Assembly: GCF_006345805.1 (NCBI RefSeq)
Contig: NC_043000.1
Span: 22,754,001-22,818,000 of the forward strand
DNA: 64,000 nt
From: Octopus sinensis
Lineage: Eukaryota
Direction of reading: 5' to 3'
Positions 4,128 through 62,470 of this stretch are shown here, piece after piece. Under the pieces are notes generated by a model. It worked only from the letters and a program-made list of their open reading frames with translations. It did no database searches and was not told the DNA's origin. A program made the translations under genes and the position numbers. How positions within the stretch are numbered: position 1 is the first letter of the stretch; each line of letters opens with the position of its first letter.

Positions 4128-4158
<31 letters not shown>

Positions 4159-5403: not shown

Positions 5404-5446
<43 letters not shown>

Positions 5447-5451
5447 ATATC

Positions 5452-5517
<66 letters not shown>

Positions 5518-9911: not shown

Positions 9912-10378
9912 TTTACTCTTTTTCTTGTTTCAGTCATTTGACTGTGGCCATGCTGGAGCTCCGCCTTTAGTTGAGTAAATCGACCCCAGGACTTATTCTT
10001 TGTAAGCCTTACTCTATCAGTCTCTTTTGCCGAACCGCTAAGTTACGAGGACGTAAACACACCAGCATCGGTTGTCAAGCTATGTTAGGGGGACAGACAC
10101 AGACACACACACTCACACACATACATATATGCATATATGTTGGGGGTACAAACACAGACGCACAAACATATACACACACATACATATATATATATACATA
10201 CAACGGGCTTCTTTCAGTTTCCGTCTACCACATCCACTCACAAGGCATTGGTCGGCCCGAGGCTATAGTAAAAGACACTTGCCCAAGGTGCCACGCAGTG
10301 AGACTGAACCCAGAACCATGTGGTTCGAACCACTCCATGTGGTTCATAAGCAAGCTACTTACCACACAGCCACTACTG
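9912..10378 (-). mobile_element. SINE family A
   Basis: Full family-A layout with internal (CA)/(TA) tract. Confidence 0.9.
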
Positions 10379-13794: not shown

Positions 13795-15005
13795 CGGTAT
13801 TTCTTTCGGCTTTACGTTCTGGGGTCAAATGTCGCCGAGATCGATTTTGACATTCATCCTTTCGGGATTTATGGAATAAGTATCAGTCGAGCACTGGAGT
13901 TGGTGCCATTGACTTACCCCACCCTGAACATTGCAGGCCTTGTGCCAAAATTAGAAAGATTATTAAAGCCGGATTTAAGGTGGTGAGCTGGCAGAAGTGT
14001 TATAGCACCGGAAAAAAATTGCTTAGCGGCATTTCTTCCGGCTTTTTAGGTTCGGAGCTCAAATTCTGCTGAGGTCTGTTTTGCCTTTCATCCTTTCGCT
14101 GTCGATAAAATAAAATACTAGTCACGTACTGGTATCAATATAATCGACTTATCCAGGCGGCGAGCTGTCGGAAACGTTAGTACGCCGGCTAAATGCTTTG
14201 TGGTATTTCGACCGCTGCAGCGTTCTGAGTTCAAATTCCACCGAGGTCGACTTTGCTTTTCATCCTTTCGAGGTCGATAAATTAAGCACCAGTTACGCAC
14301 TGGGGTCGATGTAATCGACTTAATCCGTTCGTCTATCCTTGTTTGTCCCCTCTGTGTTTAGCCCCTTGTGGGTAGTAAAGAAATAGGTATTTCGTCTGCC
14401 GTTACGTTCTGAGTTCAAATTCCACCGAGGTCGACTTTGTTTTTCATCCTTTCGGGGTCGATAAATTAAGTACCAGTTACGTACTGGGGTCGATTTAATC
14501 GACTTAATCCGTTTGTCTGTACTTGTTTGTCCTCTCTGTGAGCCCCTTGTGAGCAATAAAGAAATAAGAAACGTTAGCACGCTGGGAGAAATGCTTAGCG
14601 ATATTTCGTCTGTGTTTACGTTCTGAGTTCAAATTCCGTTGAGGTCGACTTTGCTTTTTGCAGTCGATAAATTAAGTACCAGTTGCGTACTGGGGTCGAT
14701 CTAATCGACTGCTCCTCGCTCCAAAAATTTCGAGCTTTGTGCCTAGAGTAGAAAAAGATATAATCGACTTATCTCTTCTCAAATTACTGGTCTTGTGCCA
14801 AAATTAGAAAGGATTACTAAAGCCGGATTTAGAGCGGCGAGCCGGGGGTATCGGTGGTGTGCTTGAAAGCAATAACTTGCGACGTTCTTAGTTCAAATTC
14901 CGCCGATGTCAACTTTGCCTTTCATCCCTCTGGTGTCGATAAAATAAAGGAGTTAAATATTGGAGTTGATGGTATCATCTTACTCTCCCCATCAAAATTT
15001 GCTGG
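13795..15005 (+). mobile_element. Cluster of tandem/nested SINE-B copies (about 7 monomers)
   Basis: Repeated GTTCTGAGTTCAAATTCC..CGAGGTCGACTTTG..TTTCATCCTTTCG.GGTCGATAAATTAAG.ACCAGTT units with two alternative tails (..AGCCCCTTGTGGG..AAAGAAA and ..CTTGTGCC.A.A.TAGAAA). Confidence 0.88.
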
Positions 15006-16367: not shown

Positions 16368-16429
<62 letters not shown>

Positions 16430-16503
16430 GTATATATATAATATATATAATGTATATATATATATGTATATATATATAATATATGCATATATATATATAT
16501 ATG

Positions 16504-16581
<78 letters not shown>

Positions 16582-16752
16582 ATATGCATATATACGACGG
16601 GCTTTTTCCGTTTCCGTCTACCAAATCCACTCACAAGGCTTTGGTTGGCTCGAGGCTATAGTGGAAGACACTTGCCCAAGGTGCCACGCAGTGGGACTGA
16701 ACCCGAAACCATGCGGTTCATAAGCAAGCTACTTACCACGCAGCCACTCCTA
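16158..16752 (-). mobile_element. SINE family A with expanded (CA)n/(TA)n interior
   Basis: Family-A termini flank ~16370-16595 microsatellite. Confidence 0.9.
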
Positions 16753-21637: not shown

Positions 21638-22120
21638 TGCAGGCGTGGTTGTGGGACAAGAAGCTTACTTCTCAATTACATGGTGCCGAGTTCAGTCCCA
21701 CTGCGTGGCACCTTGGGCAAGTGTCTTCTACTATAGCCTCGGGTCGACCAAAGCCTTGTGAGAGGATTTGGAAATCGGAAACTGAAAGAAGCCCGTTGTA
21801 TATATATATATATATATATATATATGTTTAAATATATGTGATGTATGTATGTATGTATGTATGTATGTATGTATGTATGTATGTATGTATGTGTGTATGT
21901 ATGTATGCGTGTATATATGTATGCATGTGTCCGTGTGTGTTTATCCTCCATCATTGCTTGACAACCGATGTTGGTGTGTTTACGCCCCCGTAACTTAGCG
22001 GTTCGGTAAAAGCAAGTATTAAGCTAACAAAGAATAAGTCCTAAGGTCGATTTTTTCGACTAAAACTTTTTAAGGCTGTGCTCCAGCATGGTCGCAGTCA
22101 AGTGACTGAAGCATGTAAAA
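21638..22120 (+). mobile_element. SINE family A
   Basis: GCAGGCGTGGTTGTG head, GAAAGAAGCCCGTTG-(TA)n(TATG)n interior, family tail. Confidence 0.88.
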
Positions 22121-22161
22121 GTGCAAACAAGTAAAACAAACAAAGACTCCCCCTCCCAACT

Positions 22162-22345
22162 GTTGTCGGGTATATGGATACCTGACCACAGGAGGGGATA
22201 TGGAGGGTATTTGTTGTTGGGTATATGGATACCCGACCACAGGAGGGTATATGGAGTGTATTTGTTGTTGGGTGTATGGATACCCGACCACAGGAGGGTA
22301 TTTGGAAGACATTTGTTGTTGGGTATACGTATACCTGATCACAGG
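22162..22345. repeat. 51-bp tandem repeat, ~3.6 copies
   Basis: Unit TTGTTGGGTATATGGATACCCGACCACAGGAGGGTATATGGAGTGTATTTG. Confidence 0.9.
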
Positions 22346-22409
22346 ATGGACAGTGGTAATAGACGTAGTAGGGGCAAGAGTATCTAGTTTCTGATGGCTT
22401 CCACCTTTT

Positions 22410-22666: not shown

Positions 22667-23289
22667 TTTAGAATTTCGTTTCTTTGAAACGTAAGTGTTT
22701 TTCTCAATTTCTCCTCTTTATGAACGCTCTAATCGTTCTCTTTCAATCACCAAATCCAAATTCCTTCTCTGTTAATCTTTTATTTCCGCCATTAAATATT
22801 TTGTTGTATCAGTTTCCTGCCCCGGTTGTTTTAATTTGTTATTCTCTAAATGTCCTTCTGCAGCTTCGATTTTTCGACATTTTGATCAAAGACAGATGTG
22901 CTTGACCATGTCGTTGAAAGCAGTTCAATAAAATGAATAATACATTGAGGTACAACAGTATTTAGATGTTGTCATAATGCTAATGCAGTACCGCATACGA
23001 CAACGTAATAGTTTACAGATGTAGTTGGTATTGTTGTTCAACTCCAGGTAAGTTCAAGTCAATGAGCAAAGGCGTTCCAGCCGTGATCATCACTGTATTT
23101 TTGTATATCTAGGGATTACATATAGGCGCAGGCATGGCTGTGTGGTTAAGGAGCTTGTTTTGCAACCATGTAGTTTTTGGTTCAGTCCCATTGCGCGGCA
23201 ACTTGGGCAAATGTCTTCAACTATAACCTATGACAGACCAATGCCTTGTGAGTGAATTTGGCCGACGGAAACTCTATGCAAGCACGTCA

Positions 23290-23990
23290 CACATCTGGCA
23301 GGAGAGTTGTTAGTTAGGTCGTCTGTTACTCTGAAATTTGGATGGATATTGGAGTGGTGGGATGGGGTGGGGGTGAGGGGGAGGATTTTACGTTCATTGG
23401 AACTGGTTTCAATTCTGGGGATATATTCGATTGAGTTTTTATAGCCGGCACGTTGTAGAGCGCAATTGTAATATTCTGCATATTGATCGAATAAATCTTT
23501 ATTAGCAGATAGTGAGGAAATCCAGTAGAAATCCACAACAGATTAAAATCTGTTACTTGGGGTGGTGGTAGTCGGATGAGTAGTTCCCGTAGTTGAGGTT
23601 TTCCCCAGGTTTGTGGTAAGGGTAGAAGGTTTGGTTTAGCAAATCTAGGGTTACGTCCAAGAAATTAATAGCTTTAACGTTGTTACAGAAGGAGATGTTA
23701 AGTCCGAGTTTTTGAAAAAGCTTCTTAATCTTTTTCTAGTCTGTTTGATTTTCTGGTTGCTAGACCTTAGGATTACGAACAGACCATCGTCTCTGTATAG
23801 ACCACCTGAGATGTTGAGGAATTGTTCATGGATACCGTTAAGTAGGTAATGCTCTACAAGGTTTGTAACTTGACCGGAGTCACTGGCCCCCATAGGGATG
23901 TCAAAGAAGTTGGATATTTACCACTTCCGAGGTTCCGCTCGTTATAAAACATATGTAGCCCGGTTCGTATTTACTCCATTCCTTAACTCA
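23290..23990 (-). mobile_element. Penelope-like element RT fragment (YRDD type) nested in a SINE-A (SINE halves 23125-23289 and ~24330-24490)
   Basis: FFDIPMGASDSGQVTNLVEHYLLN...GGLYRDDGL...NFLDVTLDLLNQTFYPYHKP...LSANKDLFDQYAEYYNCALQRAGYKNSIEY, with frameshifts. Confidence 0.8.
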
Positions 23991-25200: not shown

Positions 25201-25255
<55 letters not shown>

Positions 25256-25259
<4 letters not shown>

Positions 25260-25542
25260 TTCCCTGTGTGTGTTTGTGTAAGAATTTTTCATTTTTTTTT
25301 GTTTTCAAAAACTGACTCTTTTGCTGTTTACTACTCTTTTACTCTTTTACTTGTTTCAGTCATTTGACTGTGGCCATGCTGGAGCACCACCTTTAGTCGA
25401 GCAAATCAACCCCAGGACTTATTCTTTGGAAGCGTAATACTTATTCTATCGGTCTCTTTTGCCGAACCGATAAGTTACGGGGACGTAAGCACATCAGCAT
25501 CGGTTGTCAATCGATGGTGGGGGACAACACAGACACACAAAC

Positions 25543-25573
<31 letters not shown>

Positions 25574-25908
25574 CACACACACACCACACACACACACACA
25601 CAACACACACACACCACACACAGAGACTTCCCTGTGTGTGTTTGTGTAAGAATTTTTCATTTTTTTTTGTTTTCAAAAACTGACTCTTTTGCTGTTTACT
25701 ACTCTTTTACTCTTTTACTTGTTTCAGTCATTTGACTGTGGCCATGCTGGAGCACCACCTTTAGTCGAGCAAATCAACCCCAGGACTTATTCTTTGGAAG
25801 CGTAATACTTATTCTATCGGTCTCTTTTGCCGAACCGATAAGTTACGGGGACGTAAGCACATCAGCATCGGTTGTCAATCGATGGTGGGGGACAAACACA
25901 GACACACA

Positions 25909-25992
<84 letters not shown>

Positions 25993-26142
25993 TATATACG
26001 ACGGGCTTCTTTCAGTTTCCGCTTACCAAATCCAATCATAAGGCTTTGGTCGGCCCGAGGCTATAGTAGAAGACACTTGACCAAGGTGCCACGCAGTGGG
26101 ACTGAACCCAGAACCATGTGGTTCGTAAGCAAGCCACTCCTA
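25256..26142 (-). mobile_element. SINE family A with a 368-bp tandem duplication of its 3' half and flank
   Basis: 25256-~25525 is essentially identical to 25624-~25893; both breakpoints lie in (CA)n. Confidence 0.9.
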
Positions 26143-30159: not shown

Positions 30160-30363
30160 TACTTGTTTCATCTATTGGACTGCGGCCATGCTGGAGCATT
30201 TCCTTGACGGGTATAATCGAACAAATCGATACCAGTACCTATTTTTAGTTATGACACTTATTCTGTCGATCTTTTATGGAAACAAGCCGATACCGTTTGT
30301 CAAGCGGCAATAGGATAAACACCAAGACACAGACACACAGACACAGACACAGACACAGACACA

Positions 30364-30456
<93 letters not shown>

Positions 30457-30621
30457 TATGACTTCAACACAGTTTCTATCTACCAAATTTACCCTTAAGA
30501 CATTGGTCGACACTAAGCTATTGTACAGGACATTTGTTCAAGGTTCCATGGAATGGGACTGAACCCTAAACCACGTAGCTGCAAAGCGAGATTCTTAACT
30601 ACACAGCCCTATCTGTGTCAT
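30160..30621 (-). mobile_element. Diverged SINE family A whose 5' end merges into the satellite
   Basis: Minus strand GACACAGATAGGGCTGTGTAGTTAAGAATCTCGC...GGGTTCAGTCCC...CCTTGAACAAATGTCC, (TG)n interior, GAAACAAGTAAAAG tail. Confidence 0.8.
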
Positions 30622-33600
30622 CATAGGCAAGCCTGCGACATCACAACCATGCTTGCACCATCACAGCCACGCCTGTGCCACCACAGCAATGCCTGCGCTA
30701 TCACAGCCATGTCTGCGCAACCACAGTCATGCTTGCGCCATCACAGCCATGCTTGCGCCATCACAGCCACGTCTGCGTCATCACAGCCATGCTTGCGCAA
30801 CCACAGCCATGCCTGCGCCCCCACAGCAATGCCTGCGCTATCACAGCCATGTCTGCGCAACCACAGTCATGCTTGCGGCATCACAGCCATGCTTGCGCCA
30901 TCACAGCCACGTCTGCGTCATCACAGCCATGTCTGCGCAACCACAGTCATGCTTGCGCCATCACAGCCATGCTTGCGCCATCACAGCCACGTCTGCGTCA
31001 TCACAGCCATGTCTGCGCAACCACAGTCATGCTTGCGCCATCACAGCCATGCTTGCGCCATCACAGCCACGTCTGCGCTATCACAGCCATGTCTGCGCAA
31101 CCACAGTCATGCTGCGCCATCACAGCCATGTCTGCGCCATCACAGCCACGTCTGCGCTATCACAGCCATGTCTGCGCAACCACAGTCATGCTTGCGCCAT
31201 CACAGCCATGTCTGCGCCATCACAGCCACGTCTGCGTCATCACAGCCATGTCTGCGCAACCACAGTCATGCTTGCGCAACCACAGCCATGCCTGCGCCAT
31301 CACAGCCATGCTGCGCCATCACAGCCATGTCTGCGCTATCACAGCCATGTCTGCGCAACCACAGTCATGCTTGCGCCATCACAGCCATGTCTGCGCCATC
31401 ACAGCCATGCTTGCGCCATCACAACTATGCTTGTACTATCACAGCCATGCCTGCGCCATCACAGTCATACCTGCGACCTCACAGCCAAGCTGGTACCATC
31501 ACGGCAACGCTAGCGCAAGCACAGTCATGCCTGCACCATCACAGCCTTGCCTGCGCCATCACAGCTATATCTGCGCCATCACAGCTATGCTTGCATCATC
31601 ACAATCCCGCCTACGCTATTACAGCCTTGTCTGTGCCATCACAGCTATGCCTGCGCCATCACAGCTATGCCTGCGCCATCACAGCTATGCCTGCGCCATC
31701 ACAGCTATGCTTGCATCATCACAATCCCGCCTACGCTATTACAGCCTTGTCTGTGCCATCACAGCTATGCCTGCGCCATCACAGCTATGCCTGCGCCATC
31801 ACAGCTATGCCTGCGCCATCACAGCTATGCCTGCGCCATCACAGCTATGCTTGCATCATCACAATCCCGCCTACGCTATTACAGCCTTGTCTGTGCCATC
31901 ACAGCTATGCCTGCGCCATCACAGCTATGCCTGCGCCATCACAGCTATGCCTGCGCCATCACAGCTATGCTTGCATCATCACAATCCCGCCTACGCTATT
32001 ACAGCCTTGTCTGTGCCATCACAGCTATGCCTGCGCCATCACAGCTATGCCTGCGCCATCACAGCTATGCCTGCGCCATCACAGCTATGCTTGCATCATC
32101 ACAATCCCGCCTACGCTATTACAGCCTTGTCTGTGCCATCACAGCTATGCCTGCGCCATCACAGCTATGCCTGCTCCATCACAGCTATAATGCATCATCA
32201 CAGCTATGCTTGCATCATCACAATCCCGCCTACGCTATTACAGCCTTGTCTGTGCCATCACAGCTATGCCTGCGCCATCACAGCTATGCCTGCGCCATCA
32301 CAGCTATGCCTGCGCCATCACAGCTATGCTTGCATCATCACAATCCCGCCTACGCTATTACAGCCTTGTCTGTGCCATCACAACTATGCCTGCGCCATCA
32401 CAGCTATGCCTGCGCCATCACAGCTATGCCTGCGCCATCACAGCTATGCTTGCATCATCACAATCCCGCCTACGCTATTACAGCCTTGTCTGTGCCATCA
32501 CAGCTATGCCTGCGCCATCACAGCTATAATGCATCATCACAGCTATGCTTGCATCATCACAATCCCGCCTACGCTATTACAGCCTTGTCTGTGCCATCAC
32601 AGCTATGCCTGCGCCATCACAGCTATGCCTGCGCCATCACAGCTATGCCTGCGCCATCACAGCTATGCTTGCATCATCACAATCCCGCCTACGCTATTAC
32701 AGCCTTGTCTGTGCCATCACAGCTATGCCTGCGCCATCACAGCTATGCCTGCGCCATCACAGCTATGCCTGCGCCATCACAGCTATGCCTGCGCCATCAC
32801 AGCTATATCTGCGCCATCACAGCTATGCTTGCATCATCACAATCCCGCCTACGCTATTACAGCCTTGTCTGTGCCATCACAGCTATGCCTGCGCCATCAC
32901 AGCTATGCCTGCGCCATCACAGCTATGCCTGCGCCATCACAGCTATGCCTGCGCCATCACAGCTATGCCTGCGCCATCACAGCTATGCTTGCATCATCAC
33001 AATCCCGCCTACGCTATTACAGCCTTGTCTGTGCCATCACAGCTATGCCTGCGCCATCACAGCTATGCCTGCGCCATCACAGCTATGCCTGCGCCATCAC
33101 AGCTATGCTTGCATCATCACAATCCCGCCTACGCTATTACAGCCTTGTCTGTGCCATCACAGCTATGCCTGCGCCATCACAGCTATGCCTGCGCCATCAC
33201 AGCTATGCTTGCATCATCACAATCCCGCCTACGCTATTACAGCCTTGTCTGTGCCATCACAGCTATGCCTGCGCCATCACAGCTATGCCTGCGCCATCAC
33301 AGCTATGCCTGCGCCATCACAGCTATGCTTGCATCATCACAATCCCGCCTACGCTATTACAGCCTTGTCTGTGCCATCACAGCTATGCCTGCGCCATCAC
33401 AGCTATGCCTGCGCCATCACAGCTATGCCTGCGCCATCACAGCTATAATGCATCATCACAATCCCGCCTACGCTATTACAGCCTTGTCTGTGCCATCACA
33501 GCTATGCCTGCGCCATCACAGCTATGCCTGCGCCATCACAGCTATGCCTGCGCCATCACAGCTATGCTTGCATCATCACAATCCCGCCTACGCTATTACA

Positions 33601-36600
33601 GCCTTGTCTGTGCCATCACAGCTAGCCTGCGCCATCACAGCTATGCCTGCGCCATCACAGCTATGCTTGCATCATCACAATCCCGCCTACGCTATTACAG
33701 CCTTGTCTGTGCCATCACAGCTATGCCTGCGCCATCACAGCTATGCCTGCGCCATCACAGCTATGTCTGCGCTATCACAGCCATGTCTGCGCAACCACAG
33801 TCATGCTTGCGCCATCACAGCTATATCTGCGCCATCACAGCTATGCTTGCATCATCACAATCCCGCCTACGCTATTACAGCCTTGTCTGTGCCATCACAG
33901 CTATGCCTGCGCCATCACAGCTATGCCTGCGCCATCACAGCTATGCCTGCGCCATCACAGCTATGCTTGCATCATCAACAATCCCGCCTACGCTATTACA
34001 CGCCTTGTCTGTGCCATCACAGCTATGCCTGCGCCATCACAGCTATGCCTGCGCCATCACAGCTATGCCTGCGCCATCACAGCTATGCCTGCGCCATCAC
34101 AGTATGCTTGCATCATCACAATCCCGCCTACGCTATTACAGCCTTGTCTGTGCCATCACAGCTATGCCTGCGCCATCACAGCTATGCCTGCGCCATCACA
34201 GCTATGCCTGCGCCATCACAGCTATGCTTGCATCATCACAATCCCGCCTACGCTATTACCAGCCTTGTCTGTGCCATCACAGCTATGCCTGCGCCATCAC
34301 AGCTATGCCTGCGCCATCACAGCTATGCCTGCGCCATCACAGCTATGCTTGCATCATCACAATCCCGCCTACGCTATTACAAGCCTTGTCTGTGCCATCA
34401 CAGCTATGCCTGCGCCATCACAGCTATGCCTGCTCCATCACAGTATAATGCATCATCAAAGCTATGCTTGCATCATCACAATCCGCCTACGCTATTACAA
34501 GCCTTGTCTGTGCCATCACAGCTATGCCTGCGCCATCACAGCTATGCCTGCCGCCATCACAGCTATGCCTGCGCCATCACAGCTATGCTTGCATCATCAC
34601 AATCCCGCCTACGCTATTACAGCCTGTCTGTGCCATCACAACTATGCCTGCGCCATCACAGCTATGCCTGCGCCATCACAGCTATGCCTGCGCCATCACA
34701 GCTATGCTTGCATCATCACAATCCCGCCTACGCTATACAGCCTTGTCTGTGCCATCACAGCTATGCTGCGCCATCACAGCTATAATGCATCATCACAGCT
34801 ATGCTTGCATCTCACATCCCGCCTACGCTATTACAGCCTTGTCTGTGCCATCACAGCTATGCCTGCGCCATCACAGCTATGCCTGCGCCATCACAGCTAT
34901 GCCTGCCGCCATCACAGCTATGCTTGCATCATCACAATCCCGCCTACGCTATTACACAGCCTTGTCTGTGCCATCACAGCTATGCCTGCGCCATCACAGC
35001 TATGCCTGCGCCATCACAGCTATGCCTGCGCCATCACAGCTATGCCTGCGCCATCACAGCATATCTGCGCCATCACAGCTATGCTTGCATCATCACAATC
35101 CCGCCTACGCTATTACAGCTTGTCTGTGCCATCACAGCTATGCCTGCGCCATCACAGCTATGCCTGCGCCATCACAGCTATGCCTGCGCCATCACAGCTA
35201 TGCCTGCGCCATCACAGCTATGCCTGCGCCATCACAGCTATGCTTGCATCATCACAATCCCGCCTACGCTATATTACAGCCTTGTCTGTGCCATCACAGC
35301 TATGGCCTGCGCCATCACAGCTATGCCTGCGCCATCCACAGCTATGCCTGCGCCATCACAGCTATGCTTGCATCATCACAATCCCGCCTACGCTATTACA
35401 GCCTTGTCTGTGCCATCACAGCTATGCCTGCGCCATCACAGCTATGCCTGCGCCATCACAGCTATGCTTGCATCTCACAATCCCGCCTACGCTATTACAG
35501 CTTGTCTGTGCCATCACAGCTATGCCTGCGCCATCACAGCTATGCCTGCGCCATCACAGCTATGCCTGCGCCATCACAGCTATGCTTGCATCATCACAAT
35601 CCCGCCTACGCTATTACAGCCTTGTCTGTGCCATCACAGCTATGCCTGCGCCATCACAGCTATGCCTGCGCCATCACAGCTATGCCTGCGCCATCACAGC
35701 TATGCTTGCATCATCACAATCCCGCCTACGCTATTACAGCCTGTCTGTGCCATCACAGCTATGCCTGCGCCATCACAGCTATGCCTGCGCCATCACAGCT
35801 ATCCTGCGCCATCACAGCTATGCTTGCATCATCACAATCCCGCCTACGCTATTACAGCTTGTCTGTGCCATCACAGCTATGCCTGCGCCATCACAGCTAT
35901 GCCTGCGCCATCACAGCTATGCTTGCATCATCACAATCCCGCCTACGCTATTACAGCCTTGTCTGTGCCATCACAGCTATGCCTGCGCCATCCAGCTATG
36001 CCTGCGCCATCACAGCTATGCCTGCGCCATCACAGCTATGCTTGCATCACACAATCCCGCCTACGCTATTACAGCCTTGTCTGTGCCATCACAGCTATGC
36101 CTGCGCCATCACAGCTATGCCTGCCCATCACAGCTATGCTTGCATCATCACAATCCCGCCTACGCTATTACAGCCTTGTCTGTGCCATCACAGCTATGCC
36201 TGCGCCATCACAGCTATGCCTGCGCCATCACAGCTATGCCTGCGCCATCACAGCTATGCCTGCGCCATCACAGCTATGCTTGCATCATCACAATCCCGCC
36301 TACGCTATTACAGCCTTGTCTGTGCCATCACACTATGCCTGCGCCATCACAGCTATGCCTGCGCCATCACAGCTATGCCTGCGCCATCACAGCTATGCTT
36401 GCATCATCACAATCCGCCTACGCTATTACAGCCTTGTCTGTGCCATCACAGCTATGCCTGGCGCCATCACAGCTATGCCTGCGCCATCACAGCTATGCCT
36501 GCGCCATCACAGCTATGCTTGCATCATCACAATCCGCCTACGCTATTACAGCCTTGTCTGTGCCATCACAGCTATGCTGCGCCATCACAGCTATAATGCA

Positions 36601-38324
36601 TCATCACAGCTATGCTTGCATCATCACAATCCCGCCTACGCTATTACAGCCTTGTCTGTGCCATCACAGCTATGCCTGCGCCATCACAGCTATGCCTGCC
36701 CATCACAGCTATGCCTGCGCATCATCACAGCTATGCTGCATCATCACAATCCCATCCCGCCTACGCTATTACAGCCTTGTCTGTGCCATCACAGCTATGC
36801 CTGCGCCATCACAGCTATGCCTGCGCCATCACAGCTATGCCTGCGCATCACAGCTATGCTGCATCATCACAATCCCGCCTACGCTATATTACAGCCTTGT
36901 CTGTGCCATCACAGCTATGCCTGCGCCATCACAGCTATGCCTGCGCCATCACAGCTATGCTGCGCATCACAGCTATAATGCATCATCACAGCTATGCTTG
37001 CATCATCACAATCCCGCCTACGCTATTACAGCCTTGTCTGTGCCTCACAGCTATGCCTGCGCCATAACAGCTATAATGCATCATCAAAGCTATGCTTGCA
37101 TCATCACAATCCCGCCTACGCTATTACAGCCTTGTCTGTGCCATCACAGCTATGCCTGCTCCATCACAGCTATAATGCATCATCACAGCTATGCTTGCAT
37201 CATCACAATCCCGCCTACGCTATTACAGCCTTGTCTGTGCCATCACAGCTATGCCTGCGCCATCACAGCTATGCCTGTGCGCCATCACAGCTATGCCTGC
37301 GCCATCACAGCTATATCTGCGCCATCACAGCTATGCTTGCATCATCACAATCCCGCCTACGCTATTATTACAGCCTTGTTGTGCCATCACAGCTATGCCT
37401 GCGCCATCACAGCTATGCCTGCGCCATCACAGCTATGCCTGCGCCATCAAGCTATGCCTGCGCCATCACAGCTATGCCTGCGCCATCACAGCTATGCTGC
37501 ATCATCACATCCCGCCTACGCTATTACAGCCTTGTCTGTGCCATCACAGCTATGCCTGCGCCATCACAGCTATGCCTGCGCCATCACAGCTATGCCTGCG
37601 CCATCACAGCTATGCTTGCATCATCACAATCCCGCCTACGCTATTACAGCCTTGTCTGTGCCATCACAACTATGCCTGCGCCATCACAGCTATGCCTGCG
37701 CCATCACAGCTATGCCTGCGCCATCACAGCTATATCTGCGCCATCACAGCTATGCTTGCATCATCACAATCCCGCCTACGCTATTACAAGCCTTGTCTGT
37801 GCCATCACAGCTATGCCTGCGCCATCACAGCTATGCCTGCGCCATCACAGCTATGCCTGCGCATCACAGCTATGCTGCGCCATCACAGCTATGCCTGCGC
37901 CATCACAGCTATGCTTGCATCATCACAATCCCGCCTACGCTATTACAGCCTTGTCTGTGCCATCACAGCTATGCCTGCGCCACATCACAGCTATGCCTGC
38001 GCCATCACACAGCTATGCCTGCGCCATCACAGCTATGCTTGCATCATCACAATCCCGCCTACGCTATTACAGCCTTGTCTGTGCCATCACAGCTATGCCT
38101 GCGCCATCACAGCTATGCCTGCGCCATCACAGCTATGCCTGCGCCATCACAGCTATGCTTGCATCATCACAATCCCGCCTACGCTATTACAGCCTTGTCT
38201 GTGCCATCACAGCTATGCCTGCGCCATCACAGCTATGCCTGCGCCATCACAGCTATGCCTGCGCCATCACAGCTATGCCTGCGCCATCACAGCTATATCT
38301 GCGCCATCACAGCTATGCTTGCAT
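30602..38324. repeat. 7.7-kb 20-bp satellite with higher-order repeat (modal ~120 bp)
   Basis: Monomer GCCATCACAGCTATGCCTGC. HOR = (A)2-5 + GCCATCACAGCTATGCTTGC + ATCATCACAATCCCGCCTAC + GCTATTACAGCCTTGTCTGT. An older CCAT/CAACC variant block occupies ~30640-31430. Confidence 0.97.
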
Positions 38325-38402: not shown

Positions 38403-38640
<238 letters not shown>

Positions 38641-41496
38641 TGGCGGCGAGGTTGGCCCTCGACCAACACTTCAACGCCAAACACGAAGGATGTGCTGTCA
38701 GAGCTAGGATGCGTGCTCTAAGGAACGAAGGTGTTGGAGCCGCGAGAGAGGCCCGGGTGGCAGAGGCGCAACAGGGCAACAAAGCCACCATTCGGTCACT
38801 GGTAGATGAACAGGGGCGCGAATTGCTCGAGCCAAGTAAAATGTGTGAGGCCTTTCAGCAGCATTTTGCCCGACTGTTCGGAACGAGTGGAGGGCAAGAA
38901 CGTAGGGTGGACTTCAGTGCCTACCTACATAGCCTACCACGACTCTCGACAAGAAAGGCAGGGTGCTGCGAAGGTGCCATCACGGCGGCGGAAGTGCGGG
39001 AAGCGATGGCAGAATGCTCGAGGGACAAATCACCGGGTTTGGATGGTCTACCCTACGAGCTTTACAATTGTATGCCAGACTTGTTTGGAGATCTCTTGGC
39101 GGCGGTGTACTGCAACTGGCAGCAAAACGGGAGCATTCCTGGTTTTGTGAGCCGAGGAGCCGTAACACTGCTGAAGAAAGATCTAAACAAGGGAAATGTA
39201 ATAGATAACTTTAGGCCCATCACTCTGCTTAATGCAGACTTGAAAATTTTGGCCAAGGTGCTAGCCAAGAGGTTGGCGCTTGTCATCGAAAACTGGTCGA
39301 CAAGGCGCAAACATGCGCCGTGCCAGGCCGGACCATCCATGACAACCTCCATCTGATGCGCTACATCATAGACAGGGTAGTTAACGAACCTGGCATGGGT
39401 GGGGCCCTGATCAACTTGGATCAATCGAAAGCCTTTGATAGGGTAGACCATCGATACTTGGAGGCAGTCCTGAGAGCGGCTGGTTTCGGTCCCGTCTTCC
39501 GCGGCTGGATAGCTGCCTTGTACAGAGGCATCCGTTCGGTAATTCGCGTAAATGGACATCTATCGAGACCTTTCGACATTGCACGTTCGGTCCGTCAGGG
39601 ATGCCCCCTCTCGGCGCTTCTATACGTATTGACTCTTGAGCCACTACTGCGGAAGCTGGCGACTCTAAGGGGCATCCCGCGAGAATTGGGATGCGGGACG
39701 AGCGTGTCTGCATACGCGGACGACGTCACCGTCATAGTGTCAAGCCACGAGCACATCGAGCTGGTCGGCGAGACACTGAAAAACTACGAAGCGGTGACAG
39801 GAGCGAAAATCAACCGGGAAAAGTCAGTGGGCTTGCGACTAGGCACCTGGAGAAGCAAGCCCATGCCGTCCACCAGCGCCTCCGTCGTGGGACGCTGGAC
39901 CGACGGCCCGGTTGAGTTGCTCGGGGTCTGGTTCGGTCCGGACCTCCAAGTGGAGAAGAACTGGAACGAGATAACGAGTAGGGTGGTCACTCTCGCCCGG
40001 CAATGGGCCGAGAGGAAACTGTCCCTAAAAGGTCGAGCGGAGGTGGCGAACACGTACATCGCGTCCGTCATCTACTACCGCCTGACCGTCGTACCTTGTC
40101 CCGACCCTACCATCACCAAACTACAACGCATCCTCTTTCGCTTCTTGTGGAAAGGATGCGTCCCGATGGTCAGGCGATCCATTTGCTGTCAACACCCGTT
40201 AAAAGGAGGGCTGGGCATGCCGTGGTTGATGATGCGCAGACACGCGCTGAGACTGCGACATCTCTGGCTCTATGTAGACGACGGTGAACAGGTGTGGTCG
40301 CCGTTTGTGAGGCACGCTTTCCCGCAGCTCGTCTCCATGACCGAACTGCAGTCGTGGATCAAAAGAGGCCGAGGAAGGGCGAATGGCACCGCGAGTGTCG
40401 CGTTGCTCTCAAGCAACTCTGCCGTCCTGGGTCGACCTTAAGTGACTTCAACACAACCAAAGCATTCTATAGGGGTTTAGTGGAGGGGAGGTACGACGAC
40501 GAGCTCGGGGCGAACCTGGACGTCGACGAGGAGTACCTGACCCGCCTGTTCGGGACGACTTTCGGGCCAGGGCCCATGGACAACTTCCAGAGATCCCTGG
40601 CCTGGCAGTGCTACCGAGAAGCGCTACCCGTTCGGGATAAGCTCTACAGACACGGCTCGAGAAACACGGGGCCGACCTGCCCGAGATGCGGTCAGAGCGA
40701 CGAAACCGTTCTGCACGCACTCGTTCAGTGTCCAACAATTTCCGACCTGTGGGCTTATGTCGAACAACTGCTGTCACGTGTGGGACGAGTCGGTTTATCA
40801 GCTGAGTCTATCGTCAATATTGTCACGCCTCCTTCCTTCAAACGGGAAGGAAGAGCTATTTTCATCATCCTTGTGGCTATGGCGAAAGAATGTATCTGGT
40901 GGACGCGTCTGAAAGGATTGGAGACAAACACTTTCCTCTCTGGTCAATCTCTCATCAACTTCTTCAAGTACCACTTGAAAAGGAAAGTGAGAGTAGAGAG
41001 GCAAGTTTTGTCTAGCGAATGTTTTAAAAAAGATGGGTGAATGTAGCAAGAATGGCACGTATGAATGACGAAGCCACCTTGAGCATAGTCCTATGAACCC
41101 AGAAATCGAAAACAGAGAGTTGCTTATTTGCAAAAAAAAAAAAAAAAAAAAGAAATATAAAATGTGACTTCATTGACCGAGGTTACCGTGGTCTTTTCCG
41201 CAGGCTTTTCTTTCCACGGGTAAACCTCACCTGTCCTCCCCTTTACACTTCATATTGACATTTCTGTGATAACGATCCCTATTGATCATTTTTTTTTCCT
41301 CTCCCCCCCCCCCTTTTTTTTTTTTTTTTTTTTAACCCCCCTTATTTTTGTCCTCTTTCTCTCCTTTTACGATCCCTTTTGATCGAACCTCCCCCTTCCT
41401 TTTTTTTTTTTTTTTTTTTTTAATACCTTCAAAAGAAAAGCTCTACCTTGTAATTTGTTCTATCTGTGTGCAGCCCTGTGTGGCTAATAAAGAAAC
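38641..41496 (+). mobile_element. 5'-truncated Tx1-group (L1 clade) non-LTR retrotransposon: RT plus C-terminal zinc-binding domain, 3' UTR
   Basis: KSPGLDGLPYELY, NFRPITLLNADLKILAK, LDQSKAFDRVDH, VRQGCPLS, AYADDVTV, C-terminal CPRC...ETVLHALVQC. Three -1 frameshifts. AATAAA at 41486 is followed by (TATC)n. Confidence 0.95.
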
Positions 41497-41744: not shown

Positions 41745-42700
41745 ATACATGCTTCAAATAGTGCGACACAACCCAATTGATACGCGTTTCAAATAGTGCG
41801 GCAAACCCAATTGATAGTGTTTCAAATAGTGTGGCATAACCCAATTGACACGTATTTCAAATAGTGCGGCAAACCCAATTGATAGTGTTTCAAATAGTGT
41901 GGCATAATCCAATTGATACGCGTTTCAAATAGTGCGTGATAATCCAATTGATAGTGTTTCAAATAGTGTGGCATAAGCCAATTAACAGTGTTTCAAATAG
42001 TGCGGCATAACCCAATTGATACGTATTTCAAATATTGCGGCACAAGCCAATTGGTACGTGTTTCAAATAGTGCGGCATAACCCAACTGATACGTGTTTCA
42101 AATAGTGCGTGATAATCCAATTGATAGTGTTTCAAATAGTGTGGCATAACCCAATTGATAATGTTTCAAATAGTGCGGCATAGCCCAATTGATACGTGTT
42201 TCAAATAGTGCGGCATAATCCAATTGATAGTGGTTCAAATAGTGCGGGATAACACAATTGATGCGTGTTTCAAATAGTGCGGCATAACCCAATCGATACA
42301 TGTTTCAAATAGTGCGGCAAACTCAAATTGATGGTGTTTCAAATAGTGCGGTACAACCCAATTGATACCGTTTCAAATAGTGCAGCAAACCCAATTGATA
42401 GTGGTTCAAATAGTGCTGCATAACCCAGTTGATAGTGTTTCAAATAGTGCGGCATAACCCAATTGACAGTGTTTCAAATAGTGCGGCATAACCCAGTTGA
42501 TAGTGTTTCAAATAGTGCGGCATAACCCAATTGACAGTGTTTCAAATAGTGCTGCATAACCCAGTTGATAGTGTTTCAAATAGTGCGGCATAACCCAATT
42601 GACAGTGTTTCAAATAGTGCGGCATAACCCAGTTGATAGTGTTTCAAATAGTGCGGCACAACATAATTGATATGTGTTTCGAATAGTGCGGCATAACACA
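41745..42700. repeat. 34-bp minisatellite, ~27 copies
   Basis: Unit GTTTCAAATAGTGCGGCATAACCCAATTGA(T/C)AGT; alternating AATTGACAGT/AGTTGATAGT variants at ~42420-42650. Confidence 0.95.
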
Positions 42701-43220
42701 AATGCAATGTGCATGCTTAATCGATCCTTCGTTTGATTGACTAAAATGCTACAGAAAGAAGGGAATTAAGTGCCATTCTAATCTTCTGAAAAAAAATTGT
42801 ACATATATCGAACAAAAGCGGGATGGTCCATAGTCGTAAACTGAAGTTGACTGGCTACTACTTTATTGACCAGTGTCCATGAGAAAGAGGAGGGGAGATA
42901 TACTTATCAGATCTTATATAATGGTATTTAGCATTTGCATGTTTCATGTCAAGATAGAATTGTAATTTAATCCGCGATGTTAAGAATAATCCAATAAATA
43001 GAGGAAGACAGACTGAATTAATTAGAAATATAAAGGAAAATTATTATCTGTTAAGATGGAATCCATTAAGGAAAATATTCTTTTGTCTGTTGGTTGGATG
43101 ACATTAAATTAAGTAAAATTGCTTTCCATAAAATACTGAAGAATCGATTCAATTTCTGTCAGTTTGTAGACGATTTAGTATATTACAGATATGTTTAGCC
43201 TAAGAAGAATAGAGAGAATC

Positions 43221-56520: not shown

Positions 56521-56654
56521 GTTATTATGGTTCTGTGGTAAGAAGTTTGCTAGGCGCGGGCGTGGCTGTGTGGTAAGATGTTTGCTTCCCAACCACATGG
56601 CCCATCTTTTAAACCAACACAAAACACGATAACATTTCCAAACAGTTAAGATCA

Positions 56655-57234
56655 AAAACCGGCGGTGAGATATCAGAGTCGTTAGCGTGCCGGACAAAAC
56701 GGCATTTCTTCTAGCTTTACGCTTGGTCGACCTAGTTTTTTTTTAACCTTTCGATAAAATAAGTACCAGTCGAGTACTGGGCTCGATGTAATCGACTAAT
56801 TCCTTCCCCCAAAATATTTGGCTTTCTCCTTATATTCTTTTGTACTTTTTCTTCTTTTACTTGTTTCAGTTATTTGACTGCTGTCATGCTGGGGCACCGC
56901 TTATTATTTCCTTATTGCCCAGAAGGGTAATACACAGAGGGGACAAACAAGGACAGATAAAGGGATTAAGTCTATTACAGCGACCCCAATGCGTAACTGG
57001 TACTTAATTTATCGACCCCGAAAGGATGAAAGGCAAAGTCGACCTCGGCGGAATTTGAACTCGAAACGTAACGACAGACGAAATACCGGTAAGTATTTCT
57101 CCCGGCGTGCTCACGATTCTGCCAGCTCGCCGCTTTTTAGTCGAACAAATCAACCCCAGGACTTATTTTTTTGTAAGCCTAGTACTTATTCTACCGGTGT
57201 CTTTTGCCGAAGACAGACACTGGTACACAAACAT

Positions 57235-57304
<70 letters not shown>

Positions 57305-59647: not shown

Positions 59648-59717
<70 letters not shown>

Positions 59718-59893: not shown

Positions 59894-60522
59894 CAGTAAT
59901 CCCTCGCCATATCGCCGTTCACTTATCACGCATTCCGGTTCACCTATCGCGCCCTCCGGTTCACCTACCGCGCATTCCGGTTCACCTATCACGCACTCCC
60001 GTTCACCTATCACGCACTCCGGTTCACTTATCGCGCACTCCGATTCACTTATCGCGTCCTCCGATTCACCTACTGCGCACTCCGGTTCACCTATCGCGCC
60101 CTCTGGTTCACTAATCACGCACTCGTTCACCTATCGTGTACTCCGGTTCACCTACCGCTCACTCCGGTTCACCTATCACGCACTCCCGTTCACCTATCAT
60201 GCACTCCGTTTCACTTATCGCGCACTCCGATTCACCTATCGCGCCCCTCGGTTCACCTACTGCGCACTCCGGTTCACCTATCACGCACTCCGGTTCTCCT
60301 ATCGCGCACTCCGGTTCACCTATCGCGCACTCACATTCGCCTATCGTGGACTCCGGTTCATCTATCGCGGATTTTTCTGGGTAACATATGTAAATCTCTA
60401 TCAAGGTTTCCTTTGCATATCGCAGATTTCTGCGACCGATAGGTATTTATATCTTTTTAGATTTTAATTATTTCTGTGGGAGGTTTTTGAACGTAACATC
60501 CGCGGTAATCGAAGGATTACTG
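59894..60522 (+). mobile_element. pogo/Tigger-like MITE with TA TSD and internal 21-bp minisatellite
   Basis: TA|CAGTAATCCCTCGCCATATCGC ... GCGGTAATCGAAGGATTACTG|TA. About 21 copies of CCGGTTCACCTATCGCGCACT at ~59915-60370. Confidence 0.85.
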
Positions 60523-61299: not shown

Positions 61300-61823
61300 T
61301 TTTTGGGGCGGGGTCTAGTCGGTTACATCGACCCCAGTGCGTAACTGGTACTTAATTTATCGACCCGGAAAGGATGAAAAGCAAAGTTGACCTCGGTGGA
61401 ATTTGAACTCAGAACGTAACGGCAGACGAAATGCCGCAAAGTATTACGCCCGGCGTGCTATCGCTTCTGCCAGCTCGCCGCCTTTTGCTTTTTTTCTTTT
61501 ACTATACTAATAAAAGAGAAAGCTTCTTTGCAGTAATGTGGTAGACTGGCAGAATCGTTGACACGCCGGAGGAAATGCTTAGTAGCATTTCGTCCGTTCT
61601 TACATTTTAAGTTAAAATTTCGGTGTTCCCATGGCCATGTGGTTAGGAGCTCGTTTTGAAATCGCATGGTTTCGGGTTCACTCCCAATGCACAGCACCAT
61701 TGGTAACTTCTACTGTGTCTCCGGGCCAACCAATGTTTTGTAAGATGGAAACTGCGTTGAAGTCCATCGGATATATATACATGTGTGTGTGTGTGGTGTG
61801 TGTGTGTGTGGTGTGTGTGTGTG

Positions 61824-61854
<31 letters not shown>

Positions 61855-62470
61855 ATTTGTGTGTGTATGTTTGTTCTTCACCACGGCTTGATAACTAGTT
61901 CTAGTTTCTTAACGTCCTGTAACTTAGAGGTTCGGCAAAACAGGATGTTAAAGGACTTTGAAAAACAAGTACTAGGGTTGGTTTATTCGTTAAACCCTTC
62001 AAGGCGGTGCCCCAGTATGACCGCAGTCCAATGACTGCAACAAGTGAAAGATAATAAGATATCTGTACTTCCTGGAATGTGTATACTCTTTACTCTCTGT
62101 TACTCTTTTGCTTGTTTCAGTCACTTGACTGCGGCCATACTGGAGCCTTGCCTTTTAGTCGAAGAAATCGACCCCAGGGTTTATTCTTTGTAAGCCTAGT
62201 ACTTATCCTATCGGTATCTTTTACTGAACCACTAAGTTTCGGGGACATAAACACACCACCATCGGTTGTCAGGCGATGTTGGGGGGACAAACACACACAT
62301 ATACATATACACGATGGGCTTCTTTCAGTTTCCGCCTACCAAATCCACTCACAAGGCTTTGGTCGGCCCGAGGCTATAATAGAAGGCACTTGCTCAAGGT
62401 GCCACGTAGTGGGACTGAACTCGGAACCATGTTGTTGGTAAGCAAACTACTTACTACACAGCCACTCGTG
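61300..62470. mobile_element. SINE-B (-, 61300-61483), SINE-A (+, ~61630-62050) and SINE-A (-, ~62095-62470)
   Basis: Family motifs as above. Confidence 0.85.

What the first reader, a model, noticed from the sequence alone, without database searches (positions are those of the whole stretch)
30160..38324. 7.7-kb higher-order satellite born from the 5' end of a tRNA-derived SINE
Seen: the reverse complement of the monomer, GGCGCAGGCATGGCTGTG(AT), equals the first 18 nt of SINE-A (exact at 23125-23142; array example 30802-30819). The array begins precisely where a minus-strand SINE-A (30160-30621) has its 5' end, that SINE's own first 18 nt being the terminal monomer. Monomers nearest the SINE keep the SINE-like CCAT variant and are heterogeneous (~30640-31430). 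Distal ones are homogenised to CTAT and organised in a 100-160-bp (modal 120) higher-order repeat. Inference: polar amplification of a SINE head (start of the A-box region) into an alpha-satellite-like HOR array, i.e. the birth of a satellite caught with its parent attached. It may bind TFIIIC-like factors, be transcribed or nucleate heterochromatin.
Basis: partly seen in the sequence, partly recalled or inferred. Interest (0 to 1): 0.8.

Follow-up and report, generated by a model that had tools for sequence, protein, structure and literature searches.

The report
SINE-head-derived 20-bp minisatellite array
A 7.7-kb run of about 386 copies of a 20-base unit has grown out of the first 18 bases of an old mobile element (a SINE) that is still attached; it is a neat but ordinary example of a known way that tandem repeats arise from mobile DNA.

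Summary
Bases 30621-38324 are a head-to-tail array of about 386 twenty-base units. The ancestral unit is the first 18 nt of the SINE-A head (exact at 23125-23142) plus AT. The array runs in phase into the 5' end (30620) of a minus-strand SINE at 30160-30620, and lies only on that side.

Diverged "relic" units occur in two places, 30621-30699 and 31418-31557. Between them lies an 80-bp four-unit higher-order repeat. Beyond them lies a 100-160-bp (modal 120) repeat, (A)n-B-C-D, whose copies are about 99.9% identical. Inside it, a 2.1-kb block recurs 2.26 kb downstream, differing mainly by 1-2-nt gaps, so it may partly be an assembly artefact.

The best reading is a local SINE-derived minisatellite. 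An old small duplication of the SINE head diverged, and recent unequal exchange or slippage then amplified multi-unit blocks. This kind is known: squamate SINE-derived satellites, and Alu- and B1-derived minisatellites. TFIIIC binding is not supported, because there is no B box and the A box is cut short. Satellite status (many loci, heterochromatin) could not be tested: no genome of this probable cephalopod was reachable. I rate it a new member of a known kind, of modest interest.

The parts
30160..30620 (-). Parent SINE copy of the old 'GGTTAAG' subfamily. It has a tRNA-like head, a body, an internal (AC)n/(GACACA)n microsatellite at 30327-30447, and a 3' domain ending ...CAAGTAAAAG. Its nt 1 is base 30620.
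   Evidence: 74% identical to the copy at 23125 and 27% diverged from the window-wide consensus. Its head GACACAGATAGGGCTGTG matches the unit at 13/18.
30621..30699 (-). Four diverged 'relic' monomers directly abutting the SINE head, 2-5 differences from the ancestral unit.
30700..31417 (-). Proximal higher-order repeat of four monomer types e-f-g-h (80 bp), with some rearranged units. All keep the SINE-like GCCATG.
   Evidence: the three intact efgh units differ by 0-1 nt in 80.
31418..31557 (-). Second block of seven diverged relic monomers (0-5 differences), including the one exact copy of the ancestral 20-mer at 31438-31457.
31558..38324 (-). Distal higher-order repeat (A)n-B-C-D with n mostly 3 (120 bp; range 100-160 bp), 54 units. 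It ends abruptly in a B monomer lacking 1 nt.
   Evidence: 26 canonical AAABCD units differ by a mean of 0.16 substitutions per 120 bp, while the monomer types differ by 3-10 of 20.
31638..33713 (-). First copy of the 2.1-kb repeated block (17 higher-order units with the same sequence of unit lengths).
33894..35969 (-). Second copy of the 2.1-kb block, 2,256 bp downstream of the first. Compared with the first it has 3 substitutions but 28 gaps of 1-2 nt.
   Evidence: 1-nt length errors are concentrated at 34-38 kb
33774..33813 (-). Island of two proximal-type monomers (e, f) lying between the two 2.1-kb copies.
23125..23300 (+). Reference SINE copy of the same subfamily. Its first 18 nt equal the ancestral unit exactly.

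Best explanation
This is a locally born SINE-derived minisatellite with higher-order structure, most likely a neutral by-product of repeat instability rather than a functional element.

Proposed history:
1. A tRNA-like SINE of the older 'GGCGCAGGCATGG...GGTTAAG' subfamily inserted (shown).
2. Its first 18 nt plus 2 adjoining non-SINE bases (AT) were duplicated in tandem, probably by slipped-strand mispairing or microhomology-mediated duplication, and grew to a short array of roughly a dozen units (inferred).
3. These units diverged at about the same rate as the SINE body. What remains of them are the relic units at 30621-30699 and 31418-31557 and the diverged B, C and D types (shown as a pattern; the ages are inferred).
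4. Much later, unequal sister-chromatid exchange, gene conversion or slippage in multi-unit register amplified two different blocks. One is a 4-unit (80 bp) block between the relics. The other is an (A)n-B-C-D block (about 120 bp) distal to them, with the young A unit itself varying between 1 and 5 copies. The near-identity of copies is shown; the mechanism is inferred.
5. A 2.1-kb stretch of the distal domain was duplicated 2.26 kb downstream, or was duplicated by the assembler.

The G-rich strand of the unit can form long slipped hairpins, which may explain why this particular 18-nt stretch is unstable (computed fold; the link to instability is inferred).
For: The array is real and far beyond chance. 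The unit equals SINE nt 1-18 exactly. The array continues in phase and in the same orientation into nt 1 of a full SINE copy. No unit-like sequence lies on the SINE's 3' side or beyond the distal end: the best match there is 13/20, within background. The SINE-head unit 's' is the hub of the type network, at distance 1 from A and g, 2 from e, 3 from f and h, 4 from B and D, and 6 from C, with inter-type distances close to additive through it. The attached SINE belongs to the same subfamily as the 23125 copy. Relic units are about 15% diverged and the SINE is 27% from the window-wide consensus, whereas higher-order copies differ by only about 0.13% in substitutions. This gives an old seed and recent amplification. 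As single-stranded DNA the G-rich strand of four ancestral units folds at -29.5 kcal/mol, z = -5.75, with 0 of 200 shuffles as good; the C-rich strand has z = +2.1. The array is 54% GC with GC skew -0.36, against 33-40% GC upstream of the SINE, which is the classical minisatellite profile. The same architecture, a tandem array whose terminal unit extends into the SINE up to its terminus, is described for squamate SINE-derived satellites (PMC10702118). TE-derived mini/satellites make up about 23% of such repeats in human (PMC3389668).
Against: No second genome or second locus could be examined, so a local origin is inferred from anatomy alone. No target-site duplication could be found to bracket SINE plus array (best shared 8-mer; 66 of 500 shuffles do as well). 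The distal end is abrupt, with no relic units, so part of the history there is missing (a deletion or other rearrangement). The origin of the 2 extra bases (AT) is unproven. The excess of 1-2-nt gaps over substitutions (28 against 3) between the two 2.1-kb copies looks like long-read consensus error, so copy number and the large duplication may not be exact. The real distal higher-order unit does not fold unusually well (z = 0.09), which weakens the hairpin argument for the recent expansion.
Confidence: 0.8

Rival explanations
1. One locus of a multi-locus SINE-derived satellite family. The same head segment has been tandemised at many SINE-A copies, or an array has been dispersed, and the family may sit in heterochromatic or subtelomeric regions as squamate sSats do. 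This does not exclude a SINE-head origin; it changes the scale.
For: Squamate sSats occur at many loci and arise independently from abundant SINEs. This SINE is very dense here, at least 15 copies in 64 kb. The window also holds a partial head duplication at 56528-56600 and a tandem multimer of a second SINE family at 14080-14700, so SINE tandemisation is not rare here.
Against: Only one such array lies in the window, and the other ~14 SINE heads have no 20-mer repeats. Scans of viral and metagenome collections found nothing, but they also lack the SINE itself, so they are uninformative.
Confidence: 0.3
2. Coincidence: a pre-existing, older satellite unrelated to the SINE, next to which a SINE happened to insert.
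For: None positive. It simply cannot be excluded by comparative data, because none were available.
Against: The 18/18 identity to the SINE head has a chance expectation of about 4e-5 for the window (my arithmetic: 64,000 positions x 40 phases and strands / 4^18). The junction is exact at SINE nt 1, in the same orientation and in the 20-bp register. The array lies on one side only. The head-identical unit is the hub of the variant network. The unit carries the GGCATGG variant specific to the attached SINE's subfamily.
Confidence: 0.03
3. Assembly artefact: the array is much shorter in reality, or differently organised, and was inflated or duplicated by long-read assembly.
For: The two 2.1-kb blocks differ by 3 substitutions but 28 small gaps. 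55 of the 66 off-length units lie between 34 and 38 kb. Canonical higher-order units show 2.2 gap columns against 0.16 substitutions per 120 bp.
Against: The array holds 31 distinct exact-length variants in an ordered, non-random layout with two domains and relic blocks. The first 3 kb are almost free of length errors. An artefact could change the copy number but could not create the repeat or its junction with the SINE.
Confidence: 0.25
4. The first tandem units were made during retrotransposition itself, by reiterated copying of the RNA 5' end by the LINE reverse transcriptase, with AT as untemplated bases.
For: The unit starts exactly at SINE nt 1 and carries 2 non-SINE bases. Ahmed and Liang suggest that retrotransposition may initiate some TE-derived repeats.
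Against: No known mechanism re-primes repeatedly at nt 18. None of the other heads in the window carries 20-mer repeats. The bulk of the array is demonstrably much younger than the insertion.
Confidence: 0.05
5. A functional element: a TFIIIC-binding or insulator array, a pol III promoter array, a (neo)centromeric satellite, or a repeat-protein exon.
For: The unit contains the 5' part of the A-box region. The + strand is open in all three frames, with ORFs up to 1529 aa.
Against: The A-box is cut short: TGGCTGTGATG matches 8/11 of TRGCNNAGTGG, against 10/11 in the SINE, and no B-box-like motif is present (read from the sequence; B-box dependence of TFIIIC is established knowledge). The ORFs exist only because the unit has no stop codon on that strand, frameshifting indels do not close them, and the translated array has no relative among 5.8 billion proteins. 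The array is 7.7 kb with unique flanks, not centromere-scale. Rfam finds nothing.
Confidence: 0.04

Closest known systems
SINE-derived satellites (sSat1-3) of squamate reptiles (Vassetzky, Kosushkin & Ryskov 2023, PMC10702118)
   Same: Both are tandem arrays whose unit is a portion of a tRNA-related SINE. In both, a longer terminal unit runs on into the SINE up to its terminus, so the parent is attached. Some sSat units include a few extra bases of unknown origin. Long arrays are more homogeneous than short ones. Alternating di- and trimeric subvariants are seen in sSats. sSat arrays hold up to hundreds of units.
   Different: sSat units are 67-290 nt and usually include body or box B; here the unit is 20 nt, from the extreme 5' end only. 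The higher-order repeat here is more developed (4 and 5-8 units at about 99.9% identity). The host is a probable cephalopod, not a reptile. The multi-locus distribution and subtelomeric bias shown for sSats could not be tested here.
Alu-derived minisatellites in human (Jurka & Gentles 2006; Ahmed & Liang 2012, PMC3389668) and the mouse B1-derived VNTR family (Bois et al. 1998, as cited in PMC9659126)
   Same: In each case a short internal segment of a SINE expands in situ into a minisatellite after insertion. Older elements carry more units. Initiation is ascribed to slippage between short direct repeats, and expansion is local.
   Different: Those arrays are mostly short (many have only two units) and have no described higher-order repeat. 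The B1 VNTR has a 6-bp unit. Here there are about 386 units of 20 bp, starting exactly at the SINE's first base and including 2 flanking bases.
PcH-sat of the limpet Patella caerulea, related to Nin-SINE (PMC11121367)
   Same: It is a mollusc tandem repeat with a SINE-derived segment.
   Different: PcH-sat has a 179-bp unit, is AT-rich, makes up about 10% of the genome and is pericentromeric by FISH. No parent SINE is shown attached to it.
Primate alpha-satellite higher-order repeats
   Same: Both show diverged monomers (here 15-50% apart) arranged in a multi-monomer unit whose copies are nearly identical (here about 99.9%), as expected from unequal exchange in multi-unit register (the alpha-satellite properties are from general knowledge).
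   Different: The monomer is 20 bp, not about 171 bp. The array is 7.7 kb, not megabases. There is no evidence of centromere location, and the origin is a SINE head.

Membership tests
SINE-derived tandem repeat / sSat-type array | Repeat unit is homologous to part of a SINE present in the same genome | tested here: met
   18/18 nt identity to the head of the copy at 23125. The head-identical unit is the hub of all variants.
SINE-derived tandem repeat / sSat-type array | Terminal unit continues into SINE sequence up to the SINE terminus (parent attached) | tested here: met
   The array is in phase with nt 1 (base 30620) of a full SINE at 30160-30620. The array lies on that side only.
SINE-derived tandem repeat / sSat-type array | Unit length in the described range (about 70-290 nt) | tested here: not met
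   The unit is 20 nt. This places the array in the minisatellite size class.
SINE-derived tandem repeat / sSat-type array | Many loci per genome; preference for subtelomeric or heterochromatic regions | not testable with these tools
   No genome of the source organism is reachable. The public DNA scans lack even the SINE.
Classical minisatellite (VNTR) | Unit of about 10-100 bp in a single array of 0.5-30 kb flanked by unique sequence | tested here: met
   20 bp x about 386 = 7.7 kb. The flanks are unique within the window.
Classical minisatellite (VNTR) | GC-rich relative to surroundings, with purine/pyrimidine or G/C strand asymmetry | tested here: met
   GC 0.53-0.57 and GC skew about -0.36 inside the array, against GC 0.33-0.40 upstream of the SINE.
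Classical minisatellite (VNTR) | Copy-number polymorphism between individuals | not testable with these tools
   Only one assembly is available.
Higher-order-repeat satellite (alpha-satellite-like) | Diverged monomers within a unit; near-identical multi-monomer units | tested here: met
   Types differ by 3-10 of 20 nt. AAABCD units differ by 0.16 substitutions per 120 bp, and efgh units by 0-1 per 80 bp.
Higher-order-repeat satellite (alpha-satellite-like) | Very long arrays (hundreds of kb to Mb) at centromeres or heterochromatin | tested here: not met
   The array is bounded at 30621 and 38324 by a SINE and by unique DNA followed by a LINE fragment. Its chromosomal position is unknown.
Pol III type-2 promoter / TFIIIC-binding site | Complete A box plus B box | tested here: not met
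   Read from the sequence. The unit holds only the first 8 A-box positions; the junction with the next unit changes the last three. The B-box-like GGTTCAGTCCC lies at SINE nt ~55-65, outside the unit.
tRNA-derived SINE (the parent element) | tRNA-like head with A and B boxes; dispersed in many copies; 3' domain | tested here: inconclusive
   At least 15 dispersed copies are present, with A- and B-box-like motifs and a 6-bp acceptor-like stem in the centroid fold. But ARAGORN and Rfam report no tRNA, even at E <= 10 on the youngest copy. tRNA-derived SINEs in octopus are on record (Ohshima & Okada 1994, cited in PMC9223172). Identity with those families rests on my memory only.

The most novel reading that the evidence does not exclude
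In this probable cephalopod genome, heads of an old SINE subfamily recurrently seed 20-bp arrays. These would have matured into a true multi-locus, possibly heterochromatin-associated, satellite with higher-order repeats. This locus would then preserve every stage: parent SINE, decayed primary array, and two independent higher-order expansions. It would be the first invertebrate system in which satellite and higher-order-repeat birth can be reconstructed step by step from a known progenitor.
Probability: 0.12. Interest if true: 0.6.

Novelty: new member of a known kind. Interest (0 to 1): 0.33.

Why it matters
How satellites and their higher-order repeats start is rarely visible, because the progenitor is usually lost. 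Here the progenitor, the decayed first-generation units and two young higher-order expansions lie side by side in 8 kb. That makes the locus a clean illustration of the 'library, then amplification, then homogenisation' model. It would extend SINE-derived tandem repeats from squamates, primates, rodents and a limpet to a probable cephalopod, with an unusually short unit made only of the SINE's first 18 bases. As a single locus it does not change any concept. Its value would rise if the same arrays prove to be numerous, polymorphic or chromosomally localised.

Tried and rejected
1. Protein route to other loci. The array is open in all three + frames, so I searched its 1257-aa translation against 5.8 billion proteins. 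There were no hits, so this is neither a coding repeat nor a path to other arrays.
2. Exact look-up of a window ORF (the LINE RT) in public assemblies. Nothing is on record, so the source contig was not found.
3. DNA scans for the unit dimer in viral contigs and metagenome contigs, and for the SINE core in metagenome contigs. All returned zero. Because even the SINE is absent, the absence of the array there says nothing.
4. LINE RT homologues gave only a taxon hint: the best named relatives are from the cuttlefish Acanthosepion pharaonis at 45-54% identity. The contigs I could check, L001 and L003, carry neither the SINE nor the unit. L002 and L004 were never exposed to the script; L002 had only an exact-motif check, which was negative, and L004 was not checked.
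5. Target-site duplication bracketing SINE plus array. The best shared word is 8 nt, GTTTAAAA, and is not significant (66/500 shuffles).
6. Decayed units beyond the distal end or on the SINE's 3' side. None were found.
7. Rfam and ARAGORN on the SINE head. No tRNA call.
8. CpG-driven decay. The CpG positions take 11 of 93 variant changes, about their share of sites, so there is no sign of methylation-driven mutation. Changes are mostly transitions, 73 against 20.
9. The 21-bp array at 59917-60369, which lies 37 bp from another SINE head, was checked as a possible second case. Its unit is unrelated to the SINE.
10. Literature. Nothing in the held library covers octopus or cephalopod satellitomes or SINE-derived minisatellites, and the sequences themselves appear in no paper.
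Full report
**What is there**

Tandem Repeats Finder reports a single array at 30631-38322 with period 20, 385 copies and consensus GCCTGCGCCATCACAGCTAT. Segmenting from base 30621 by dynamic programming gives 386 units, 320 of them exactly 20 nt. Read on the minus strand, the unit is GGCGCAGGCAT(G/A)GCTGTGAT. With up to 3 mismatches it occurs 195 times in the window, against 0 expected from shuffles. The only hit outside the array is at 23125, the head of a SINE copy, where the two mismatches are the final AT.

**The parent element**

A BLAST of the 23125 element against the window finds at least 15 dispersed copies on both strands. Their aligned heads start at GGCGCAGG.
- The consensus head is GGCGCAGGAGTGGCTGTGTGGTAAG... 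An older subfamily (23125+, 30619-, 61622+, 12894-) reads GGCGCAGGCATGGCTGTGTGGTTAAGG.
- The heads carry an A-box-like TGGCTGTGTGG and a B-box-like GGTTCAGTCCC. The centroid RNA fold shows an acceptor-like stem, an anticodon-like stem and a small T-like stem.
- ARAGORN and Rfam do not call a tRNA, even at E <= 10 on the youngest copy. 'tRNA-derived' therefore rests on motifs and on the literature: tRNA-derived SINEs are recorded in octopus by Ohshima & Okada 1994, as cited in PMC9223172.
- From memory, the element looks like the abundant octopus SINE with a central microsatellite and a ...CCAGCATGGCCGCAGTC...CAAGTAAAAG tail. I could not verify this.
- The only tool-based taxon hint comes from the LINE reverse transcriptase next to the array. 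Its best named relatives are from the cuttlefish Acanthosepion pharaonis, at 45-54% identity.

**The junction**

The copy at 30160-30620 (minus strand) is a full SINE with head, body, internal (AC)n at 30327-30447 and 3' domain.
- Its nt 1 is base 30620, and the 20-bp register of the array runs into it without a break. The SINE's own first 18 nt occupy the place of the last unit.
- That head has decayed to 13/18 matches. This fits the age of the copy: 74% identity to 23125 and 27% from the window consensus.
- No unit-like sequence exists on the SINE's 3' side or beyond the distal end. The best 20-mer match there is 13/20, within the background range.
- By my arithmetic, an exact 18-mer match between the unit and anywhere in the window is expected about 4e-5 times by chance. 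Add the exact boundary, orientation, phase and subfamily-specific GGCATGG, and coincidence can be set aside.

**Internal anatomy**

Typing each unit against the common variants gives this map:
- 30621-30699: four diverged units.
- 30700-31417: a four-type repeat e-f-g-h (80 bp) with some rearranged copies.
- 31418-31557: seven diverged units, including the one exact ancestral 20-mer at 31438.
- 31558-38324: 54 units of (A)n-B-C-D, holding 5-8 monomers, with 31 of them 6-mers (120 bp).

Its three intact copies differ by 0-1 nt in 80. Canonical AAABCD copies differ by only 0.16 substitutions per 120 bp, while the monomer types differ by 3-10 of 20 positions. That contrast is the definition of a higher-order repeat.

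The SINE-head unit is the hub of the variant network, at distance 1 from A and g, 2 from e, 3 from f and h, 4 from B and D, and 6 from C. B, C and D are as diverged as the relics, about 15-30%. The distal repeat therefore looks like an old, diverged three-unit stretch plus a young A unit, amplified together.

**A larger repeat and a caveat**

The order of unit lengths in 31638-33713 recurs exactly in 33894-35969. The two 2,076-bp stretches differ by 3 substitutions but by 28 gaps of 1-2 nt. Off-length units are concentrated between 34 and 38 kb. A 9:1 excess of tiny indels over substitutions is what noisy long-read consensus produces. So the large duplication, the exact copy number and the small length variants may be partly assembly artefacts. 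The existence of the array, its domains and its junction cannot be artefacts of that kind.

**How it most likely arose**

- Shown: a SINE with its head attached to an in-phase array; old relic units in two blocks; two very young block amplifications.
- Inferred, step 1: an early tandem duplication of 'AT + SINE nt 1-18'. AT is probably the last two bases of the 5' flank. The SINE continues with TG after nt 18, so microhomology is possible.
- Inferred, step 2: growth to about a dozen units, then divergence in step with the SINE.
- Inferred, step 3: recent unequal exchange, conversion or slippage in 4-unit and 5-8-unit register.

The G-rich strand of four ancestral units folds as single-stranded DNA at -29.5 kcal/mol (z = -5.75; none of 200 shuffles is as stable). 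The C-rich strand does not fold well (z = +2.1). This gives a plausible, untested reason for slippage at this particular sequence. The array also has the classical minisatellite profile: GC 0.53-0.57 and skew -0.36, against 0.33-0.40 GC upstream of the SINE. Variant changes are mainly transitions (73:20), without CpG excess. No target-site duplication brackets SINE plus array, and the distal end is abrupt. The left-hand history of the locus is therefore incomplete.

**What it is not**

It is not coding. The long ORFs (up to 1529 aa) exist only because the unit has no stop codon on the + strand, and the translated array has no relative among 5.8 billion proteins. It is not a TFIIIC or pol III element. 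The unit contains 8 of 11 A-box positions and no B box. It also lies upstream of the SINE's transcription start, so it would not be carried along by retrotransposition. Nothing shows that it is a centromeric or heterochromatic satellite. It is 7.7 kb long, bounded by a SINE on one side and, on the other, by unique DNA, an (ATCT)n tract and a 5'-truncated LINE.

**Comparison with what is known**

The closest described kind is the SINE-derived satellites of squamates. They share the signature architecture of a tandem array with a terminal unit that extends into the SINE to its end, occasional extra bases of unknown origin in the unit, alternating subvariants, and greater homogeneity in longer arrays (PMC10702118). 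Their units are 67-290 nt, not 20. Alu-derived minisatellites and the B1-derived mouse VNTR show the same process at minisatellite scale (PMC3389668, PMC9659126). A limpet satellite related to Nin-SINE is a mollusc precedent (PMC11121367). I found nothing on cephalopods in the held literature.

The finding is therefore a new member of a known kind. It is notable for three things: the very short unit, made solely of the SINE's first 18 nt; the well-developed two-tier higher-order structure; and the preserved parent.

**Limits**

No genome of the source organism or of a relative carrying this SINE was reachable. I put the local SINE-head origin at 0.8, the chance that similar arrays exist at other loci at about 0.3, and the chance that the assembled length or the 2.1-kb duplication is inaccurate at about 0.25.

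Noticed in passing
window 38640-41040 (+): A 5'-truncated non-LTR retrotransposon lies just beyond the array. Its ORFs match RVT_1 (E 1.7e-21) and zf-RVT (E 2.6e-8). The best named relatives are cuttlefish (Acanthosepion pharaonis) proteins at 45-54% identity, and unnamed JGI/NCBI contigs reach 73-78%. It shares no sequence with the SINE tails in the window, so it is probably not the SINE's partner.
   Followed up: partly
window 41753-42701: A 34-bp minisatellite (27.7 copies, 86% matches; unit TTCAAATAGTGCGGCATAACCCAATTGATAGTGT) starts about 700 bp after the last LINE ORF. Its origin is unknown.
   Followed up: no
window 59917-60369: A 21-bp minisatellite (21.7 copies; unit CGGAGTGCGCGATAGGTGAAC on the minus strand, CpG-rich) begins 37 bp upstream of the head of another minus-strand SINE (59880). 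The unit is not SINE-like and occurs nowhere else in the window.
   Followed up: yes
window 14080-14700: At least three consecutive partial copies of a second SINE-like family (containing GAGTTCAAATTCC...GGGGTCGAT.TAATCGACTTA) lie head to tail, with a 184-bp period at 90% identity over two of them. This is another case of SINE tandemisation in the same 64 kb.
   Followed up: partly
window 56528-56600: A short SINE head fragment (GGCGCGGGCGTGGCTGTGTGGTAAGATGTTTGCTTCCCAACCACATGG) is preceded by a second partial head (TGGTTCTGTGGTAAGAAGTTTGCT). This is a two-copy partial head duplication next to a (TTA)n tract.
   Followed up: partly
window: 4089-4164, 5351-5527, 10081-10196, 16368-16594, 21797-21928, 25942-25999, 30327-30447, 57225-57301, 59649-59715, 61782-61874: Ten SINE copies each carry a microsatellite ((AC)n, (AT)n, (TATG)n and the like) directly after the ~150-nt head/body, before the 3' domain. 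The SINE family thus accounts for a large share of the window's microsatellites.
   Followed up: partly
window 34000-38324: 55 of the 66 units with a length other than 20 nt lie here, mostly from 1-nt gains or losses in CC/TT runs. The first 3 kb of the array are almost clean. This looks like uneven consensus quality in a long-read assembly.
   Followed up: partly
window 25205-25986: A 368-bp unit is repeated 2.1 times at 97% identity. It includes (AC)n and (AT)n tracts next to the SINE copy at 26000-26134, and is a recent local duplication.
   Followed up: no
window 783-1010 and 22161-22346: Two further small tandem repeats of unknown origin: 66 bp x 3.5 and 51 bp x 3.6.
   Followed up: no
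window 38403-38640: A long compound (ATCT)n/(GTCT)n/(GCCT)n microsatellite lies between the array's distal flank and the LINE fragment. A spurious 331-aa ORF reads through it into the LINE.
   Followed up: no
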